Made by a program: the position numbers and the translations under genes. From contig OZ365117.1 in assembly GCA_977030845.1 (NCBI GenBank), forward strand, positions 3,038,001 through 3,102,000: a stretch of 64,000 nucleotides of DNA. The letters run 5' to 3'. Below are positions 1 through 12,300 of this stretch, piece after piece (position 1 is the first letter of the stretch; each line of letters opens with the position of its first letter). The stretch is from Fimbriosthenelais zetlandica (taxonomy: Eukaryota). The notes below the pieces were generated by a model. The model was not told where the DNA came from and ran no database searches. It saw nothing but the letters and a program-made list of their open reading frames with translations.

Positions 1-56
1 AAGATGCTGTTCATGTCTAATACAAAGTATCGGTAGGACAAAAGTCAGTTGCTTAC

Positions 57-356
57 CAAATGGCAGTTTAGCAGTTACAGGTTCAGTTTGAGCTGGATCA
101 CTTTCACCAATATCATTAACTGCTTTTATTTGGAAGATGTAATCTTTTCCTTCCACACATTTCTCCACCTTGAAGCTGAAGTCTTTGTCACTGACTTCTC
201 CGACCTTAACAAAGGCCTCACGTTTGACGTCGCGGCGTTCTATGACGTAGCCAGTAATGGGTGAGCCTCCATCGTGTTCAGGCTTCTCCCAACTCACCAC
301 AACAAAATCTTTGTAGATTTCTGTGGGACGAACATTCTGTGGAGGCGATGGGCGAT
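57..356 (-). CDS. Fn3 exon (DRPSPPQNVRPTEIY...TAKLPF)
   Basis: AG/GT sites, 300 nt, phase 1-1; 5 differences from 4224-4523. Confidence 0.95.
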
Positions 357-3300
357 CTAAAACAGAAGAAAAACATGTTGAATTTACTGGACTGGTCACT
401 TAGAACATGGTTGGCACTAAACTAATATTTCTAATGCTGAAAATACGGTACCTTTGACAGTGACATCAAATTCTGCGGATGCCGAGCCTGCTACATTTTC
501 AGCTGTCACTTTGTATGTGCCAGCATCAGCTGCTGTCAGGCCCTTCACCGCCAGCCTGGAATAGGTGCCCTGTGTCTCAATAGTGACACGGTTAGTGTTC
601 TCTAGTGTCACATCACCTCTTGACCAAGTGACAGTTGGTGTGGGTGTACCAGTGACTGTCACATAAAAGATCAAACTTCCCTCTGCCTTCAGTGCCTGAG
701 TCTCCTTGTACTTGTCTTCGTAGGTGATGACCGGTGCAACTGCAAAGCACAAAAACCATCATTCTCAAATTTCAGACCGTCAATAGCAAATTAAAAGACC
801 ATAACTTTACTGATTATTGGAATATCAAGAAGATTTCTCAGTTTAAGAACGCCCAGATCAAGATTGAATAGAAGAGATCTTACTATTGACTGTGAGTGTA
901 CATGAAGTCTCCACACGACCAAGCTTGTTGCCGGCCTCACAACGATATAGATGGTCGTCATTCAAATCTACCTTTGAAATCGTCAATGTTGCTACTTGAT
1001 TCTCATACGTCATGGCATATTTCTTGCCAGAACTAAGCTCTTCTTTGGAGTTCTTCCACCTGAAAAACGGTAGCATAATGTCCATATGAAGGGTGTAGCT
1101 TTTGAAACTAGTGTTTGGTTAAAGCACAGTGGAAACCAAAGATATTTGATAGTTAAGATAGAGTTGTTGCCTACCATTTAACCTTGGCAGCTGGATCTCC
1201 TGGCTTGATGGTACATTCCAGTGTTGCAGAGCAAGGAGAAGTCACAGTTTGGTCTTCCAGGGGTTTCACTAGTTCTGGTTTTTGCCCAGCTGAAATTGAA
1301 AAGCAAAAGACGTATATTCAATATAGAAAAAGATCAATATAGAAAGATTTTGAAACTTAGTCATGATGATATTGTTTCAGATCCAAAGGGCAGCAGTGCA
1401 AGGTACTTACATACGGGTTCCTTGAGAGTGACTGGCGGGTCGCTGGGATCAGACCATGGACCCTGTCCTGCCTTGTTGACAGCAGCCACACGGAACTCGT
1501 AAGTGATAGCTTCACCAAGTCTTGTCACTTTGTAGCCTGGTTCAGGTTTCTTGGTGTTGTCTGTGTCTCTGACCCAGGTGAGGGTACCTTCTATACGATG
1601 TTCCACCACGTAGTGAGTGATGGGGGCGCCACCGTCGTCAGATGGAGCTGTCCATTTAAGATCAACTGATGTTCCCCGGATGTTCTCATACTCGGCTCGT
1701 CCGGGTTTGCCTGGTTTTTCTGTAATTAACAAAAGATCAACATGAAGGTTTATTTACCATAAGATGACCAGTAACTGTGGTGATGTTCTGGTACTGAAAA
1801 GCCCAATGAAATGTTCAAATTGAGAAGGAAAGATTGGGAAGACTTACCATATGGATCCTTGGCAGTAAATGGTTCGGTTGGTGAACATGGTGGTCCAACT
1901 CCAACCTGGTTTTCAGCCATGATCCTGAACTCGTACTGATTACCTTCAATGAGTTCCTTCACCTTGTACTCGAGGTCTTTGACGGCTTCCTTGGTGATCT
2001 TTACCCATCGTGCACTGTCAGTCATTTTACGTTCTACATAATATCCAGTGATAGGCGAACCACCATCATTGGCTGGTGGTTGCCAGGTCAGAACACATGT
2101 TTCTGATGTGATATCGCTGACTGCAGGTGACTGGGGTGGACCTGGTGGATCTACAAGGAACAAATTTTCAAAATAATTTCAGTTTGCACATAAATTATCA
2201 ACATCATCCAAGAATTTGTCAAGAAGTTTATGAAAATAACATACCAAATTCGCTCTTAGCAGTGACAGGTTCTTTGAGCTCCGTGAATGGCCCTTGACCC
2301 ACGTCGTTGACAGCTGCCACTCTGAAGTAGTATTGCTTGTCCTTTACTAGGTTCTTCACGGTGTATTCCCACTCATCTGACGTCATGTCGTTGCCCCAAG
2401 AGCTGCGGGAAGCGTCACGCTTCTCAATGACGTATTTCTGAATGTCACAGCCGCCATCGTCATCTGGCTCCTCATAGGTTATTGTCACAGTAGATTCTGT
2501 GAACTCTTTGACCTTGAGTTCAGTAGGTGGTCCTGGTTTGTCTAGAGATAACAAAGTTTGTGTTTGACTTCCAATATCAATTAAACAAAAGGGTCAATGT
2601 TGCATCAGCTTTCTAAGGACAACAGCCAACAGATTTCTGTTGCACCAATGTCCATATCTTAAAGCATATTAGTTATTCCAAAGGAGATATGTTTTTGGAA
2701 CTTACCAAGGACAATGACCTTGACTGTGAGTGAGCACTCTCCATAAGGATTGCGCACAGTCACCACATATTTGCCTGAGTCGGGCCGCGTCATCTTCTTC
2801 AAACGCAAACATGTCATGCCATAGATTGTCTCTTCTTGGAATCGCTTGTCTGAGATGGGAGCGTTCTTAAACTTCCATTCTACATCAGGCATTGGGTGGG
2901 CTGAGAACGGCAGCTCTATGATGGTAGCCTGTCCTACTTTGAGTGTGCGCACCTCTTCAAAGTTGTCCAGGTTGAATGAAGGTGGCACTGAGAGAAAGAA
3001 TTGTAAGGATTGTACATGACAATAAATGAGACAGTTCATGTGTTCTTTAACTCATTTACTCCTGAATATGTCTATCTGCATCTCTACTTTTAGCCAGCAG
3101 TATCTGGCTTAAGAACAAATTTAACACTAATTGCATGTCACAGTGATTTACCTTTGACTTTGAGGGCAGCAGTTGATTGAGCACCCTCGGCGAAGTAGAC
3201 AGTATAGTCATCATCATCTTCACCAATCACATCGTTGACGGTGAGAGTGTGCTTGCCGTTTGATGCACTCATGGTGTATTTATTACCAGAAGAGATGGGC

Positions 3301-6300
3301 TTGCCGCCCTTTCTCCACTCAGCCTTCACTGACTTATTACTGATCTCACACATGAATGTAGCTGTACCGGGAATCTCGCTGACCTCCTGATCTTCCAGAG
3401 GTGTCAGGAAGTTGATAGGCTCAACTGAAAACAAACAGAGAGTGTTTAGAGTCTATTACACTATATCAGGAAAGTGATTAGTTTACCCTGGACAGATCTG
3501 ATTAGAATTAGAAAAAATGTCTTTTCCTTACCACATTTGTGAGGGAGTGAAGGATCAGAGGGTGGACCTTGTCCAGCCTTGTTCTCAGCTGTAACTCGGA
3601 ACTCGTACTCCGTCCCTTCCCTCAAGCTGGGAATAGTAAACTTCAGATCGGTCACGGCCTCTTTCTTGTTTACAACTGTCCACTTGCGATCACCAACTTG
3701 TCTCATTTCTACGATGTAATTTGTGATCTCTGCTCCACCATCTGACTCAGGAGCAGCCCAGGAGATAGAAGCAGTGACGCCTGTTGATTCTTCAACAACA
3801 GGACGTCCTGGTTTGCCTGGTGGATCGAACGGATCCTTAGCCACAAAGCTGATGGGTTCACATGGCTTGCCTTGGCCAGCATCATTCTCAGCGAACACTC
3901 TGTATTCATACTTCTCGCCTTCGTTTAGATCATCAAGAGCGAGCTCAAGGACCTTGACGGCTTTCTTGTTCACCTTGATCCATCTCGATCCAGAACGTCT
4001 TTCTACATAGTAACCAGTGATAGGAGAACCACCATCAAGTTCAGGAGGTTCCCACGTCAGTTTGGCTGATGTTTTGGTGATATCATTTGCCTTGAGGTTA
4101 ATTGGTGGGCCTGGAGGATCTGAAAGAACACAAATTATTTGTTTTAAAAGTGAGAAACGGATCCATACAAGGGCTAAATATATTTAGTACAAAATCTCAG
4201 TAGGACAAAAGTCAGTTGCTTACCAAATGGCAGTTTAGCAGTCACAGGTTCTGTTTGAGCTGGATCACTTTCACCAATATCATTAACTGCTTTTATTTGG
4301 AAGATGTAATCTTTTCCTTCCACACATTTCTCCACCTTGAAGCTGAAGTCTTTGTCACTGACTTCTCCGACCTTAACAAAGGCCTCACGTTTGACGTCGC
4401 GGCGTTCTATGACGTAGCCAGTAATGGGTGAGCCTCCATCGTGTTCAGGCGTCTCCCAACTGACCACAACAAAGTCTTTGTAGATTTCTGTGGGACGAAC
4501 ATTCTGTGGAGGCGATGGGCGATCTGTAACAGAAGAAAAACATGTCGAATTTACTGGACTGGTCACTTGAAACATGGTTGGCACTAAACCAACATTTCTA
4601 ATGCTGAAAATACGCTACCTTTGACAGTGACATCAAATTCTGCGGATGCCGAGCCTGCTACATTTTCAGCTGTCACTTTGTAAGTGCCAGCATCAGCTGC
4701 TGTCAGGCCCTTCACCGCCAACCTGGAATAGGTGCCCTGTGTCTCAATAGTGACAAAGTTAGTGTTCTCAAGTGTCACATCCCCTCTTGACCAAGTGACA
4801 GTTGGTGTGGGTGTACCAGTGACAGTCACGTAAAGGATCAGACTTCCCTCTGCCTTCAGTGCCTGAGTCTCCTTGTACTTGTCCTCATACGTGATAACAG
4901 GAGCGACTGGAATGTGAGAATGTTCTTGTTAAGTTCCACCTATATCCTTTATTTTTTAAGAGCTACATGTTGATTCTTATGAAATTTCAAAATCATATGA
5001 CATACTTGGCACAGTATGCAACCAACAGTTTGCTATGCCCATTCATGTCATGGCAGGTTGCGGAACAAACAAAATGAACATCATTCTTTAGTGGAGAATT
5101 CAATGTCTTCAACGAATAGTTGTTGAGTTATTTCAAGTATTTCTTACCATTAACTGTGAGCGTGCATGACGTTTCAACACGACCAATCTTGTTCTTAGCT
5201 TCACAGACATACATGTCACCATCATTGACAACAACATCATTTATTGTCAGTGTAGCCACGTTCTTCTCATAAGTGATCTTATACTTCTTGTTGGAACTGA
5301 TCTCTTGATTGTTCTTCATCCTGAAAAAATTCAAATTCAAACATAAATATTTTCAAAGTTTATAGCGGATTTTACTTCGCAATGATTATCTTCAATTGTG
5401 GGATAGATGCGCGAGTACTGACCACTTGATCTTGGCCTGTGGATCGCCTGGTTTGATGGTACACTCAAGTTTAGCAGTACATGGAGAAGTGACTGTCTGG
5501 TCCTGCAGTGGTTCAACAATCTCAGGGCCATGACCAGCTAGAAAGAAAAATGACCAAATAAATTAATCAATCATTTATAAAAACCAACGTAGACGGGATC
5601 TGCAGAACACCAGGGGATTCGGTATGCAGTAAGATACCAAGGCAAACTGGTATCTCTTCAAATTATGGCTCGGCAAGTTCCATACATTAGGATCTGGTAC
5701 TTACATACGGGTTCCTTGAGAGTGACTGGCGGGTCGCTGGGATCAGACCATGGACCCTGTCCTGCCTTGTTCACAGCAGCCACACGGAACTCGTAAGTGA
5801 TAGCTTCACCAAGTCTTGTCACTTTGTAGCCTGGTTCAGGTTTCTTGGTGTTGTCTGTGTCTCTGACCCAGGTGAGGGTACCTTCTATACGATGTTCCAC
5901 CACGTAGTGAGTGATGGGGGCGCCACCGTCGTCAGATGGAGCTGTCCATTTAAGCTCAACTGATGTTCCCCGGATGTTCTCATACTCGGCTCGTCCGGGT
6001 TTGCCTGGTTTTTCTGTAAATTCAAGTAAAATAGAAATAGAAATCCAGCAGCAAGATTCAGCATACAGTAGGCCTACATTTCTCTAAACTTATTGAATCA
6101 TAAGGGCCGTCCTCCACTGCTGCGATTTTACTTGCGACAATACTGCGACAACAGTGATGTTTGTCTTGCAATAAAATATAAAAATTGTAGATGAGGTGAC
6201 CAAGGATTATAGTGGTCATACTCAAGTGGATTCATTTTCATTGCCACACAAGCATCACCATTGTCGCAGTTGTGTCGCAAGCAAAATCGCAGCAGTGGAG

Positions 6301-9300
6301 TCCCGGCTTAAGAGTGGGCTTATACAATAAAGCAGATGGCATCCAGTATTGATACTTACCATATGGATCCTTGGCAGTAAATGGTTCAGTTGGAGAGCAA
6401 GGTGGTCCGACTCCAACCTGGTTCTCGGCCATGATCCTGAACTCATACTGATTGCCTTCTATGAGCTCCTTCACCTTGTATTCCAGATCTGGAACTGATT
6501 CTTTGGTGATTTTTACCCATCGAGTACTGTCTGTCATTTTACGTTCCACGTAGTAGCCCGTGACTGGGGAACCGCCGTCGTTAGCAGGTGGTTGCCAGGT
6601 GAGGACGCACGTCTCCTTGGTGATGTCACTAACAGCAGGTGACTGAGGAGGTCCTGGTGGATCTGAATGTGACAGAAATCAGTGATTAAACCTCATCGAC
6701 AAACATTATGACATTATGTATTCCTATAACAATTCCCCAAGCAGTATCAACACTGTTTCGTGCAGTATTTCTATAACAATTCCCAAAGCAGTATCGACCC
6801 TTTTTCGTGCAGTATTCCTATAACAATTCCCCAAGCAGTTTCAACCCTTTTTCGTGCATTATTCCCATGACAATTCCCCAAGCAGTATCAACGCTGTTTC
6901 GTGCAGTATTCCTATAACAATTCCCCAAGCAGTTTCAACCCTTTTTCGTGCAGTATTCCTATAACAATTCCCCAAGCAGTTTCAACCCTTTTTCGTGCAG
7001 TATTTCTATGACAATTCCCCAAGCAGTTTCAACCCTTTTTCGTGCAGTATTCCTACAACAATTCCCCAAGCATTTTCAACCCTTTTTCGTGCAGTATTCC
7101 TATAACAATTCCCCAAGCAGTTTCAACCCTTTTTCGTGCAGTATTCCTATAACAATTCCCCAAGCAGTTTCAACCCTTTTTCGTGCAGTATTTCTATGAC
7201 AATTCCCCAAGCAGTTTCAACCCTTTTTCGTGCAGTATTCTTATGACAATTCCCCAAGCAGTTTCAACCTTTTTTCGTGCAGTATTCCTATAACAATTCC
7301 CCAAGCAGTTTCAACCCTTTTTCGTGCAGTATTCCTATGACAATTTCCCAAGCAGTATCAACGCTGTTTCGTGCAGTATTCCTGGACATTATGGAGATTT
7401 CACCCTTTTTTGATTACTCATTAGTTTTTTTTTAACTTAAGACGTTGGCCAGAATCTGAGGTCTACGTACCAAATTCGCTCTTAGCAGTGACAGGTTCTT
7501 TGAGCTCAGTGAATGGCCCTTGACCCACGTCGTTGACAGCTGCCACTCTGAAGTAGTATTGCTTGTCCTTTACTAGGTTCTTCACGGTGTATTCCCACTC
7601 ATCTGACGTCATGTCGTTGCCCCAAGAGCTGCGGGAAGCGTCACGCTTCTCAATGACGTATTTCTGAATGTCACAGCCGCCATCGTCATCTGGCTCCTCA
7701 TAGGTTATAGTCACAGTAGATTCTGTGAACTCTTTGACCTTGAGTTCCGTAGGTGGTCCTGGTTTGTCTATAAATATGAAGAAAATGAATTTGAATAAAA
7801 GAAAACAGACTAGAGCAAAAATATGACTTCACTCTTATTGCCATCCTAACGTCTTTATTGTTCCTTAACTCATATGATCAAGACATGTCAAAGTAAACTT
7901 ACCAAGGACAATGACCTTGACTGTCAGTGAGCACTCCCCATAAGGATTGCGCACAGTCACCACATATTTGCCAGAGTCGGGTCGTGTCATCTTCTTCAAA
8001 CGCAAACATGTCATGCCATAGATGGTCTCTTCTTGGAATCTCTTGTCTGAGATGGAAGCGTCCTTAAACTTCCATTCTACATCAGGCATTGGGTGGGCTG
8101 AGAATGGCAGCTCTATGATGGTAGCCTGTCCTACTTTGAGCGTGCGCACCTCTTCAAAGTTGTCCAGGTTGAATGAAGGTGGCACTGAAAAGAGGCAGAG
8201 TAACTTAAATTTTGTGTTGAACAGTTATCTTTCACTTGATGCCGTGGATAGCCCCACTTAGATTGAGCCAATTATCAGGGCTTTAGATATTGGTAGGGCA
8301 GTTTTCTCACAGATAGAAGACATTTTCTGGCCGTATTTCTAAGAGAAAAACCAGTACTTACCTTTGACTTTGAGGGCTGCAGTTGACTCAACGCCCTCCT
8401 GGAAGAATACAGTGTAATCATCATCATCTTCCCCAATAACATCGTTTACTGTGAGAGTATGTTTCCCATTTGTGGACGACATGGTATACTTGGCACCGGA
8501 TGAGATGGGCTTTCCAGCCTTCTTCCATTGAGGCTTCATCCCCTTCTTGGAGATCTCACATGTGAAGGTGGCTGTGCCTGGGATTTCAGTGACTTCCTGA
8601 TCTTCAAGTGGCGTCAGGAAATTGATTGGCTCAACTGAAAAATAAAAGGTACAGCATCCGTTATCATACTACACTTTCTACACAAAATACTTTATATGAA
8701 CCAGACGCTGCAAGACCTCACTAAGAATGGTGGATTTAAGCCGGGACTCCACTGATGCGATTTTGCTTGCGACACTACTGCGACAAAGGCGATGCTTGTG
8801 AAGTTGTGTAAGAATAAAATTTATAAACTGTGGTTCAAGTGTCTAAGGCTTTAAGGCTGTCCTCCAATGGTAAATTTATCATTGAAACACAAGTATCACC
8901 TTTGTCGCAGACGTGTCGCAAACAAAATGGCAGCAGTGGAGTCCCAGCTATACTCCCACAAAGAACCAAAATCAAGGTGCTCACCATATTTCTTTGGTAG
9001 GGATGGAGGTGAGAATGGTCCCACTCCAGCCTTGTTCTCCGCCGCTACATGGAACTCATACTCTTTCTCTGCGACTAGTCCTGTCACAGAGAAGGTGAGC
9101 TCGGCGACTGTCTTGCCTTTACTGCCTGCCTTCCATGTCTTATCGCCGACAGGGCGGTACTCGATGATGTAATTAAAGATCTCTGCTCCACCGTCATTCT
9201 CAGGTGGAGTCCACGTGATCGTGGCCGAGTCTGGATTCAATTCAACAACATCGGGACGTCCTGGGGCCTCGGGAGGATCTGAAATCATATAATATTATTT

Positions 9301-12300
9301 TACTTACATTTTAATATGTAAAATGTAAGAGTTATATGTCTATAACAATTCCCCAAGCAGTATTGACCCTGTTTCGTGCAGTATTCCTATAACAATTCCC
9401 CAAGCAGTATCAACCTTGTTTCGTGCAGTATTCCTATAACAATTCCCCAAGCAGTATCGACCCTTTTTCGTGCAGTATCCTTATAACAATTCCCCAAGCA
9501 GTATCAACCTTGTTTCGTGCAGTATTCCTATAACAATTCCCCAAGCAGTATCGACCCTTTTTCGTGCAGTATCCTTATAACAATTCCCCAAGCAGTATCA
9601 ACCTTGTTTCGTGCAGTATTCCTATAACAATTCCCCAAGCAGTATCGACCCTGTTTCGTGCAGTATCCTTATAACAATTCCCCAAGCAGTATCAACCCTG
9701 TTTCGTGCAGTATCCTTATAACAATTCCCCAAGCAGTATCAACCCTGTTTAGTGCAGTATCCTTATAACAATTCCCCAAGCAGTATCAACCCTGTTTCGT
9801 GCAGTATCCTTATAACAATTCCCCAAGCAGTATCGACCCTTTTTCGTGCAGTATTCCTATAACAACTCACCAAGCAGTATCGACTTACATTTTAATATGT
9901 AGCATAACACTAGCATAAAACCACTATTTGTCCAAAAGAATATTTATGCTAGTCTCGATAGAAGATATACCCAGTTATGCCAGAAACATAGGCCATAGTT
10001 CAGAGACATCCTACAATATTATGGAACTAAAAATGAGGAAAAAGGAAGCAAATTTGCAAAACTTCCGTTATCTTTACAACAGAATACCATTTTTAATATT
10101 TACCAAATGGATCTTTGGCTACGATTGTGATGGGTTCACATGGGTCACCGACACCCGCGGCGTTCTCAGCGCAGACCCTGAACTTGTATTCTACACCTTC
10201 TTCAAGGTCATCCATGGCGAGTTGAAGGTCAGTGACTGGTGTCTTGTTGACCCTCGACCAGCGGGTACTATAGGCCGCCATACGTTCTACATAATAACCT
10301 GTCACTGGTGAGCCTCCGTCAAACTCAGGTGGTGACCACGTGAGGCGAGTGGACGTCTTGGTCGTGTCGTTGGCCTTCAGGTTGATGGGAGGACCAGGCT
10401 TGTCTGTAGATGATTGAAAACTTCATTAAACTTTCACATTCCAGTTAATTTGACATATAGACATTTTTCGAATCGGTCATCATGTTTTGAAGGTAAAGAT
10501 AAGAGTCCAATTTGGGGTTGAAGATGTTTCTTCTGACTAATGACATGCCTCAATGTGTTTCTCATAAGGTATCAACTATGTTTGCTAGACATGTAGAGAA
10601 AATGCCAGTCCTTCTGACAAATCATAGTCAGATATTTCCAGTTCTAAGCAACTACAGGTTTGTGTTGTAACTGAATCGGAGAATTGTGAACTAAAATGAA
10701 AGGTAGTGGAACATGGGTAAAATAAATGGTATGAATCTACCTAAATCCAAGCTACAATTAATTATGGTGAAAAAGTATTTCCATTCTGGATTACTTTTTC
10801 CTAAAAGCTGCGCTGGAATAAATAAAAAGGTTAAGGGACAAAATTGTAAAAATTCATGGAGAGATGAAGCGAAATAAAATAGTTCATGTAAGGAATACAA
10901 CTAAATAGTGATTGGATCCATATGGCAAGGTGATAACAAAATTGGTTTAAACAAATTAATAAAATAATTGGAGCTAACTATCTCCAGGTAAATTTAACAA
11001 AATTGGATTAAATTTAACAAATAATTGGATATATCTCCAATATTTCCAGGTGAATGCTAGATGAATAAAAAAATAAATAAGCCTGATGAAGAAGAATTAA
11101 AATCGTTGGTATTTCTGATTAGTAAGCGAAAATAAAAAATAACGTTCGGATATATAAATACCATCTCCGACTACTTACCCATTCCGTCTACACCTACTAG
11201 AAATACACATAGAAAATACACAGTCAGACACATTCATCTAATGACACGAAATACACTTAAACATACAACATAACTGAATAATTAAAATAAATAATTACCA
11301 AATGGAAGTTTAGCCGTGACTGGTTGCTCCATTTCGCAAGCATCACTAACTCCGATGGCATTTTCAGCCTTGACCCGGAAGTAGTACTGATGCCCCTCGT
11401 GGAGTTTATCAGCTTTGATGGTTCGCGTCTGTCCGTCTGTCTCTCCCACCTTGACCCAGGTGTTTTTGGCCGCGTCCCGTTTCTCGATGATGTAGTTTGT
11501 GATGGGTTCTCCACCGTCAGTTTCAGGTTCGTCCCAGACCACTACGATGAAGTCCTTGGAGTACTCGGTGGACCGGAGGTTTCTCGGAGGCGAGGGGCGA
11601 TCTGAGCAAGAGGAAGATTGTGATAGACATCCAGCCATGAAGACGATAATCAGCAAAGAAGTAGGTATTATATTTGGTATCACATTATGTAATTGCTTTG
11701 TTTTCTTGTATTGTTTTCTTAATACAATTATGCACATATAAGTACTAATAATGTGCTATGAAAATGGCACTGTAGTACTAAGTAGAAAACTGTAGTTAAA
11801 TTCTTGCCTTGGCTACCACTATATGGTATGAACATCTCCAGGACAATACATAAATACTCTAGAAAATAAACATAAATATCAAAGGAATCTTACCTTTGAC
11901 CTCAACTGTGAATTGTGCTGAGTCACTGCCCACTTCATTGGTGGCAGTAATGGTGTAGGTACCCGCCATCTTGAATGTAGCATCGACCAAGGTCACCTTG
12001 CTGGTACGGTGGTTGGTCTCAACATACACGTTATCCATACCTTCTACAGGCGCGTCGTTCAGCGTCCATTCAGCAGTCGGGCTAGGTACGCCATCTATCT
12101 TAGTGTCAATGATGGACTTCTGACCTCCTTTTAGGCTGATAACTTTCTTCAAGTCATCAGAATAGGTGATGGTAGGTGCAACTAGAATGGAAGTGATTCC
12201 TTGCATTTATTACACATCAAAACTTGCAGTATTCCTATAAGTATAACAATTCCCCAAGCAGTATCGACCCTGTTTCGTGCAGTATTCTTATAACAATTCC

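What the first reader, a model, noticed from the sequence alone, without database searches (positions are those of the whole stretch)
11179..11196. Hidden NAGNAG microexon between two A-band Fn3 domains
Seen (minus strand): CTGAC branch-like motif, UG/U-rich tract, TAGTAG tandem acceptor, 15 or 18 nt of exon, then a perfect TGG|GTAAGT donor. Both forms are phase 1-1 and stop-free, inserting GVDGM or VGVDGM into the KLPF/DKPGPP linker. The host intron is 895 nt versus 104 nt for the equivalent intron in the next repeat. Inference: a regulated Gly-rich hinge or length adjuster in a normally rigid myosin-binding region.
Basis: partly seen in the sequence, partly recalled or inferred. Interest (0 to 1): 0.7.

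Follow-up and report, generated by a model that had tools for sequence, protein, structure and literature searches.

The report
Possible tiny exon in titin-like gene
A 9-18-base piece with good splice signals lies in an intron between two domains of a worm's giant titin-like muscle gene, and the closest available relative has a similar piece in the same intron. That makes it about even odds that this is a real, lineage-restricted mini-exon, but no RNA data could be examined.

Summary
On the minus strand the Fn3 exon 11601..11299 (ends KLPF+G) and the Fn3 exon 10403..10104 (DKPGPP) are separated by an 895-nt intron. Inside it lie CTGAC, a U/G-rich tract, TAGTAG, 15 or 18 nt of stop-free phase-1 sequence (a third AG gives 9 nt), and the intron's only GTRAG donor, TGG|GTAAGT.

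On its own this is not beyond chance: about 0.4 such configurations are expected per window. The intron length is also ordinary for this gene.

New evidence comes from relatives. In the closest one reachable (L031, 84% identical in the downstream Fn3 exon, introns otherwise unalignable), the same intron holds cag|GGGATGGAG|gtgagt. This is 9 nt, phase-1 compatible and encodes G-D-G, against G-V-D-G-M here. The chance of such a site there is about 1-5% by two measures and about 11% by a third. Six more distant orthologous introns (70-78% identity, two of them only partly seen or too short) have no convincing equivalent.

No sequencing run was listed, so splicing could not be tested.

Verdict: about 0.5 that it is a real, lineage-restricted coding microexon whose regulation is unknown, and about 0.4 that it is a chance pseudo-exon. 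The hinge function is untested.

The parts
11299..11601 (-). Upstream Fn3 exon (303 nt, phase 1-1). It ends ...TAKLPF plus G, with the donor G|GTAATT.
11197..11298 (-). Upstream mini-intron if the 18-nt form is used (102 nt; 105 or 111 nt for the 15- and 9-nt forms). This is close to the 104-nt whole intron at the paralogous junction.
11223..11227 (-). CTGAC branch-point-like motif; its A lies 27 nt upstream of the first acceptor AG.
   Evidence: sequence only
11194..11199 (-). TAGTAG tandem acceptor, preceded by a U/G-rich tract of 70-75% pyrimidine. A third in-frame AG lies at 11189-11188.
11179..11196 (-). Candidate microexon: 18 nt (VGVDGM), 15 nt from 11193 (GVDGM) or 9 nt from 11187 (DGM). 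All forms are phase 1-1 and stop-free.
   Evidence: A counterpart is seen at L031:179-187.
11173..11178 (-). Donor TGG|GTAAGT, the only GTRAG in the intron. Its score is at the top of the range of this gene's real donors.
10404..11172 (-). Rest of the downstream intron (775 nt counted from the donor). It is single-copy in the genome, has a roughly 60-nt internal tandem duplication, and shows no Rfam match and no stable fold.
10104..10403 (-). Downstream Fn3 exon (300 nt, phase 1-1). It begins (D)KPGPPINLKAND.

Best explanation
The 11196/11193..11179 segment is a genuine, evolutionarily young coding microexon of a titin/connectin-like giant muscle gene. It is shared by this worm and its nearest sampled relative and is absent from more distant ones. 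When spliced in, it places 3-6 extra Gly/Asp-containing residues between the last strand of one Fn3 domain (..KLPF) and the first of the next (DKPGPP..).

Shown: the signals, the frame and the counterpart in one relative. Inferred: that the spliceosome uses the segment. The 102-105-nt upstream intron would be recognised by intron definition like the gene's other short introns, and the first TAG would be preferred, with minor use of the next AGs. Also inferred: that the insert loosens or lengthens the inter-domain linker. Whether inclusion is constitutive or alternative is unknown.
For: Signals: the donor is perfect and the acceptor scores within the range of 36 real sites of the same gene. It is the only GTRAG in the intron, with three in-frame AGs upstream. 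It is the only such configuration on either strand of the 64-kb window. By intron-only scoring, the total score of 15.8 is reached by 2 of 49 intron chunks and 1 of 71 antisense chunks.

Relative: L031 is 84% identical in amino acids and 78% in nucleotides over the Fn3 exon, and its introns do not align with the window's. It has tttttatcag|GGGATGGAG|gtgagt about 500 nt upstream of the orthologous exon. This piece is 9 nt, phase-1 compatible and reads G-D-G, sharing a G..DG core with GVDGM.

Chance of such a site in those 690 nt: 0.007 by a Markov null; 0.03-0.05 from empirical rates; and 2 of 64 plus 0 of 92 chunks by intron-only scoring.

The two species with the candidate also have the two longest introns at this junction.
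Against: No RNA evidence of any kind: no run was listed.

Only one relative supports it, and its contig does not reach the upstream Fn3 exon.

With a scoring matrix that includes exon positions, the L031 score is reached by 4 of 32 and 10 of 92 null chunks, about 11%.

Aligning the two mini-exons needs two 3-nt indels (and by eye).

Six other orthologous introns lack a convincing equivalent: L032, L033, L037, L038, L003, and the 355 nt seen of L034.

L003 has an unrelated, pyrimidine-rich 21-nt candidate that scores as well as L031's, so the scoring can yield false positives.

The window candidate was picked by eye from 64 kb, where about 0.4 are expected by chance.

Exons under about 25 nt are generally hard to define without dedicated enhancers (general knowledge).
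Confidence: 0.5

Rival explanations
1. The segment is a chance pseudo-exon. An AT-rich 895-nt intron happens to carry one GTAAGT preceded by AGs and a U-rich stretch, the L031 piece is an independent coincidence, and neither is ever spliced into mRNA.
For: About 0.4 such configurations are expected per window. The L031 score is not rare with one of the three nulls, about 11%. An equally high-scoring but clearly unrelated candidate exists in L003. There is no equivalent in L032, L033, L037, L038 or L003. The flanks do not align between the window and L031. There is no RNA evidence.
Against: Two of the three nulls put the L031 site at 1-5%. Both pieces keep phase 1, have no stop and encode Gly/Asp-rich peptides sharing G..DG. 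The two occur in the two most closely related sequences.
Confidence: 0.4
2. The segment is a non-coding splicing element: the paired 3' and 5' splice sites serve as a decoy or intermediate (recursive-exon-like) step in removing the intron, or as a poison or regulatory pseudo-exon, without contributing residues to the main protein.
For: Strong splice signals surround a very short segment. After a first splice to the 15-nt start, the junction would read G|GTGTAG, a weak donor-like sequence (reading). Other agents' notes report recursive sites elsewhere in this genome (unchecked).
Against: The acceptor and donor are not juxtaposed as in ratchet points: 9-18 nt separate them. The intron is only 895 nt, so stepwise removal is not needed. 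All three forms here, and the L031 piece, preserve the reading frame without stops, which a non-coding element has no reason to do.
Confidence: 0.07

Closest known systems
NCAM muscle-specific domain small exons (12A-12D)
   Same: These are very small, frame-preserving, alternatively spliced exons that insert a short flexible segment in an Ig/Fn3-superfamily protein in muscle (PMC2120321). From my own knowledge, they lie between the two Fn3 repeats and include 15-nt and 3-nt exons.
   Different: NCAM is a cell-surface adhesion protein and its exons are proven by cDNA and antibodies. Here the host is an intracellular titin-like filament protein and no transcript evidence exists.
NAGNAG tandem acceptors
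   Same: Two AGs lie 3 nt apart (TAG TAG) at one acceptor, which would give isoforms differing by one residue, Val.
   Different: Use of either AG is unproven here. A third in-frame AG lies 6 nt further on. The relative L031 has a single CAG.
Vertebrate A-band titin Fn3-Fn3 tandems (e.g. A77-A78, PDB 3lpw; C-zone titin in thick-filament structures 8q6t and 8g4l)
   Same: The flanking domains are most similar to these in the PDB. The junction ..P(F)|(D)KPGPP.. is the usual tight Fn3-Fn3 linker.
   Different: From my own knowledge, A-band titin exons are treated as constitutive and no linker microexon is described. My literature search for microexon + titin + fibronectin type III found nothing relevant. 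The domain order here (Ig-Ig-Fn3-Fn3-Fn3) also differs from the vertebrate super-repeats.
Muscle microexons such as the 3-bp troponin T microexon of Drosophila
   Same: A tiny muscle-gene exon that specifies muscle-type isoforms (citation seen in the reference list of PMC13322953).
   Different: It is in a different gene and protein context, and it is experimentally established.

Membership tests
Cassette microexon (30 nt or less, frame-preserving) | Flanked by a usable 3' splice site (AG, pyrimidine tract, branch point) and a usable 5' splice site | tested here: met
   By intron-only scoring the acceptor scores 6.3 (real sites range 5.8-15.3) and the donor 9.5, equal to the maximum of real sites. 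CTGAC lies 27 nt upstream of the AG.
Cassette microexon (30 nt or less, frame-preserving) | Length is a multiple of 3 and stop-free in the phase of the host intron | tested here: met
   The 18-, 15- and 9-nt forms are all phase 1-1 without stops.
Cassette microexon (30 nt or less, frame-preserving) | Junction reads or cDNA that include it | not testable with these tools
   No sequencing run was listed in two searches, so read laying could not be used. All related proteins found were genomic ORFs.
Cassette microexon (30 nt or less, frame-preserving) | Conservation of the exon and its splice sites in relatives while the rest of the intron diverges | tested here: inconclusive
   A counterpart is present in L031, the closest relative. 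It is absent or unconvincing in L032, L034, L033, L037, L038 and L003.
NAGNAG alternative acceptor | Two AG dinucleotides exactly 3 nt apart at the acceptor | tested here: met
   TAGTAG at 11199-11194.
NAGNAG alternative acceptor | Both AGs used in transcripts | not testable with these tools
   No RNA data.
SRRM4/eMIC-dependent neural microexon | UGC motif close upstream of the 3' splice site | tested here: not met
   There is no TGC in the 40 nt upstream of the acceptor. The tract is UGU/U-rich instead.
Recursive splice site (ratchet point) | Acceptor AG directly juxtaposed to GTAAGT, within a very long intron | tested here: not met
   9-18 nt separate the AG from the GT, and the intron is only 895 nt.
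Titin/connectin-like Ig-Fn3 giant muscle protein | Tandem Fn3 and I-set Ig domains, one per phase 1-1 exon, with a PEVK-like giant exon in the same gene | tested here: met
   Pfam fn3 and I-set hits. Exon map and a 1618-codon open exon upstream. Best PDB matches are titin.

The most novel reading that the evidence does not exclude
A lineage-specific, alternatively included NAGNAG microexon tunes by 3-6 residues the length and flexibility of one Fn3-Fn3 linker in the thick-filament-type part of an annelid titin-like protein. This would be a way to adjust the register or compliance of an otherwise invariant molecular-ruler region between muscle types.
Probability: 0.2. Interest if true: 0.55.

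Novelty: new member of a known kind. Interest (0 to 1): 0.35.

Why it matters
The Ig/Fn3 super-repeat part of titin-like proteins is thought to act as a fixed ruler along the thick filament, and its exons are usually treated as constitutive. A real microexon inside an Fn3-Fn3 linker would show that this part too can be varied by splicing. It would also give a small, easily tested handle (RT-PCR across one junction) in a non-model worm. If it is only a pseudo-exon, the case is a useful calibration: perfect-looking splice signals around an in-frame mini-segment arise by chance about once every two or three windows of this kind.

Tried and rejected
- **RNA evidence.** Two run searches (kind rna on 10096-11760, kind any on 8800-12300) listed nothing (two busy errors). 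Read laying therefore could not be used.
- **Repeat or transposon origin.** The intron is single-copy in the 447-Mb assembly. It holds only a roughly 60-nt internal duplication.
- **Non-coding RNA or structure.** There is no Rfam match in the window. The fold z-score is +0.86.
- **Paralogous junctions.** The nearest paralogue of the upstream Fn3 is only 59% identical. The paralogous 104-nt intron has no mini-exon.
- **Upstream Fn3 as query.** The whole exon found only distant relatives. A 42-residue C-terminal piece found no candidate.
- **JGI metagenome scan.** The best hit was 54% identity and not orthologous.
- **Representative library.** The top 150 were giant Fn3 proteins at most 48% identical across the junction, so they did not help with orthology. 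A regex survey of their linkers was too crude to use.
- **P0158/P0179 species (78% identity).** The contigs are known but no DNA is served.
- **Extending L031 upstream through an intronic ORF.** This failed because the gene calls on that contig read TGA as Trp.
- **MAFFT of the flanks, window against L031.** No meaningful alignment resulted.
- **Accession search in papers to name the relatives.** Nothing was found.
- **L034 pieces.** An out-of-frame 8/13-nt G-rich piece and a weak 9-nt CCGCGATGG|gtatcg were considered and not counted as support.

Full report
**What is there.** The window carries, on the minus strand, a long stretch of a giant titin/connectin-like muscle gene. It has dozens of roughly 270-300-nt phase 1-1 exons, each encoding one I-set Ig or Fn3 domain, and giant open exons further upstream. 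The finding lies in the intron between the Fn3 exon 11601..11299 and the Fn3 exon 10403..10104. In the PDB the downstream domain is most similar to Fn3 domains of vertebrate A-band (C-zone) titin. This is the only basis for calling the region A-band-like.

**Check of the observation.**
- The upstream exon ends ..KLPF plus G, with the donor G|GTAATT.
- CTGAC sits 27 nt before the first acceptor AG, followed by a U/G-rich tract.
- After TAG TAG come 15 or 18 nt, and then TGG|GTAAGT.
- The downstream exon starts AC AAG CCT (DKPGPP).
- The intron is 895 nt. This GTAAGT is its only GTRAG, and three in-frame AGs precede it, giving 18 nt (VGVDGM), 15 nt (GVDGM) and 9 nt (DGM), all without stops.
- The paralogous junction in the next super-repeat has a 104-nt intron.

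**Is it more than chance?** Taken alone, no. The minus strand has 25 GTAAGT sites, about 12 of them intronic. The probability that a decoy GTAAGT has an in-frame, stop-free AG within 30 nt behind a tract of at least 70% pyrimidine is 0.03-0.037. That gives about 0.4 such configurations per window. The candidate is the only one on either strand of this window. Matrices built from 36 real splice sites of the same gene place its donor at the top and its acceptor in the lower quarter of the real range. With the intron-only matrices, its total is reached by 2 of 49 intron chunks and 1 of 71 antisense chunks of equal length. The intron is single-copy in the genome. It has no Rfam match and no unusual fold.

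**RNA.** Two searches for public sequencing runs listed none. The decisive test, junction reads, therefore could not be run. None was listed; that is not the same as none existing.

**Relatives.** The upstream Fn3 as query reached only distant sequences. The downstream Fn3 reached a graded series of orthologues on genomic contigs. Colinearity of the neighbouring Ig and Fn3 exons confirms orthology for L003, L032 and L033.

| Locus | Identity (downstream Fn3) | Intron seen | Candidate mini-exon |
|---|---|---|---|
| L031 | 84% | at least 690 nt (contig ends inside it) | 9-nt cag\|GGGATGGAG\|gtgagt at 179-187 |
| L032 | 78% | about 490 nt | none intact |
| L034 | 77% | 355 nt only | weak 9-nt piece with a poor donor; out-of-frame G-rich piece |
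| L033 | 74% | about 235 nt | none |
| L037 | 72% | about 70 nt | none |
| L038 | about 72% | 147 nt | none |
| L003 | 70% | 440 nt | unrelated 21-nt pyrimidine-rich candidate |

- **L031.** Its introns do not align with the window's. The piece lies about 500 nt upstream of the orthologous exon and sits behind an 80%-pyrimidine tract. In phase 1 it reads G-D-G and has no stop. It shares a G..DG core with the window's G-V-D-G-M, although aligning the two needs two 3-nt indels.
- **L032.** It has an acceptor-like cag followed by TAGAC, about 70 nt after the upstream donor, but no donor behind it.
- **L003.** Its best candidate is a pyrimidine-rich 21-nt segment near the true acceptor. It encodes a hydrophobic peptide and I regard it as a false positive.
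- **A further species at 78%** (P0158/P0179) could not be read.

**How much the L031 site weighs.** The chance of a site of that quality in 690 nt depends on the null:
- 0.007 by a Markov null;
- about 0.03-0.05 from the empirical rate in other non-coding sequence;
- 2 of 64 and 0 of 92 chunks by intron-only scoring;
- 4 of 32 and 10 of 92 chunks when exon positions are scored too.

The equally high score of the unrelated L003 segment warns that these nulls may be optimistic. By identity and by path length on a poorly resolved tree, L031 is the window's nearest sequence. The pattern therefore fits a young exon shared by two close lineages, and it also fits two coincidences.

**Reading.** I start from a prior of roughly one in five. 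I apply a likelihood ratio of 5-20 for the L031 counterpart and about 0.4-0.5 for its absence in the more distant species. This brings me to about 0.5 that the piece is a real coding microexon, about 0.4 that it is a chance pseudo-exon, and a small remainder for a non-coding splicing element.

If it is real, the mechanism is inferred rather than shown. The 102-105-nt upstream intron would be removed like the gene's other short introns, and the first TAG would be favoured, with minor use of the following AGs. The product would carry 3-6 extra Gly/Asp-containing residues in the normally tight ..KLPF|DKPGPP.. linker. Whether inclusion is regulated, and whether it acts as a hinge, remains untested.

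**Comparison with what is known.** The nearest analogue in function is the set of very small alternative exons of the NCAM muscle-specific domain (PMC2120321). The tandem acceptor has the NAGNAG form. The piece lacks the UGC motif of SRRM4-type neural microexons, and it is not a ratchet-type recursive site. A literature search for microexon, titin and fibronectin type III found nothing on linker microexons in titin-like proteins. If real, it is a new member of a known kind, the cassette microexon, in an unusual place.

Noticed in passing
L003:7489-7509: The orthologous intron of a more distant species has a 21-nt in-frame, stop-free, pyrimidine-rich segment (cag|TGTTTCC...CGTT|gtacga) that scores as high as the L031 piece. 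It lies about 80 nt before the true acceptor and encodes a hydrophobic peptide unrelated to GVDGM. It is probably a decoy, and it shows the false-positive risk of such scans.
   Followed up: partly
L032:3559-3758 and 4444-4560; L038:445-600, 826-939, 1093-1194 and 1406-1612: In some relatives the upstream and/or the downstream Fn3 exon is split by an extra intron that this genome lacks. Intron positions in this super-repeat region therefore differ between related species.
   Followed up: no
L032:4620-4660: About 70 nt after the upstream donor there is a strong acceptor-like ttctttcag followed by TAGAC and, 24 nt later, AATGG. No GT donor follows and stops are present. This could be a decayed remnant of the same mini-exon, or chance.
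   Followed up: no
L034:64-85 and 230-238: There are two small pieces between AG and GT in the partly seen orthologous intron. One is a G-rich 8/13-nt piece before gtgaga (out of frame). The other is a 9-nt CCGCGATGG before gtatcg (in frame, weak donor, 6 of 9 identical to the window's 9-nt form).
   Followed up: partly
window 10934-11036: A roughly 60-nt tandem duplication (two repeat families with 57- and 61-nt spacing) lies inside the host intron.
   Followed up: no
L031:670-1104 and 428-562: The gene calls stored for this Logan contig translate TGA as Trp. The stored 'proteins' therefore read through TGA stops in intron sequence, which is why the locus 'does not translate to the query'.
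   Followed up: yes
window 1-8700: Two adjacent super-repeat copies (about 57-4110 and 4224-8634) have nearly identical exons, including identical splice-site contexts such as CATTTG|gtaagcaa and CCGTAT|gtaagtac.
   Followed up: no
G000:C29:969282-977528 (+): A second cluster of Fn3 exons, 41-49% identical to the upstream Fn3, lies about 2 Mb away on the same contig. It is presumably another giant Ig/Fn3 muscle gene.
   Followed up: no
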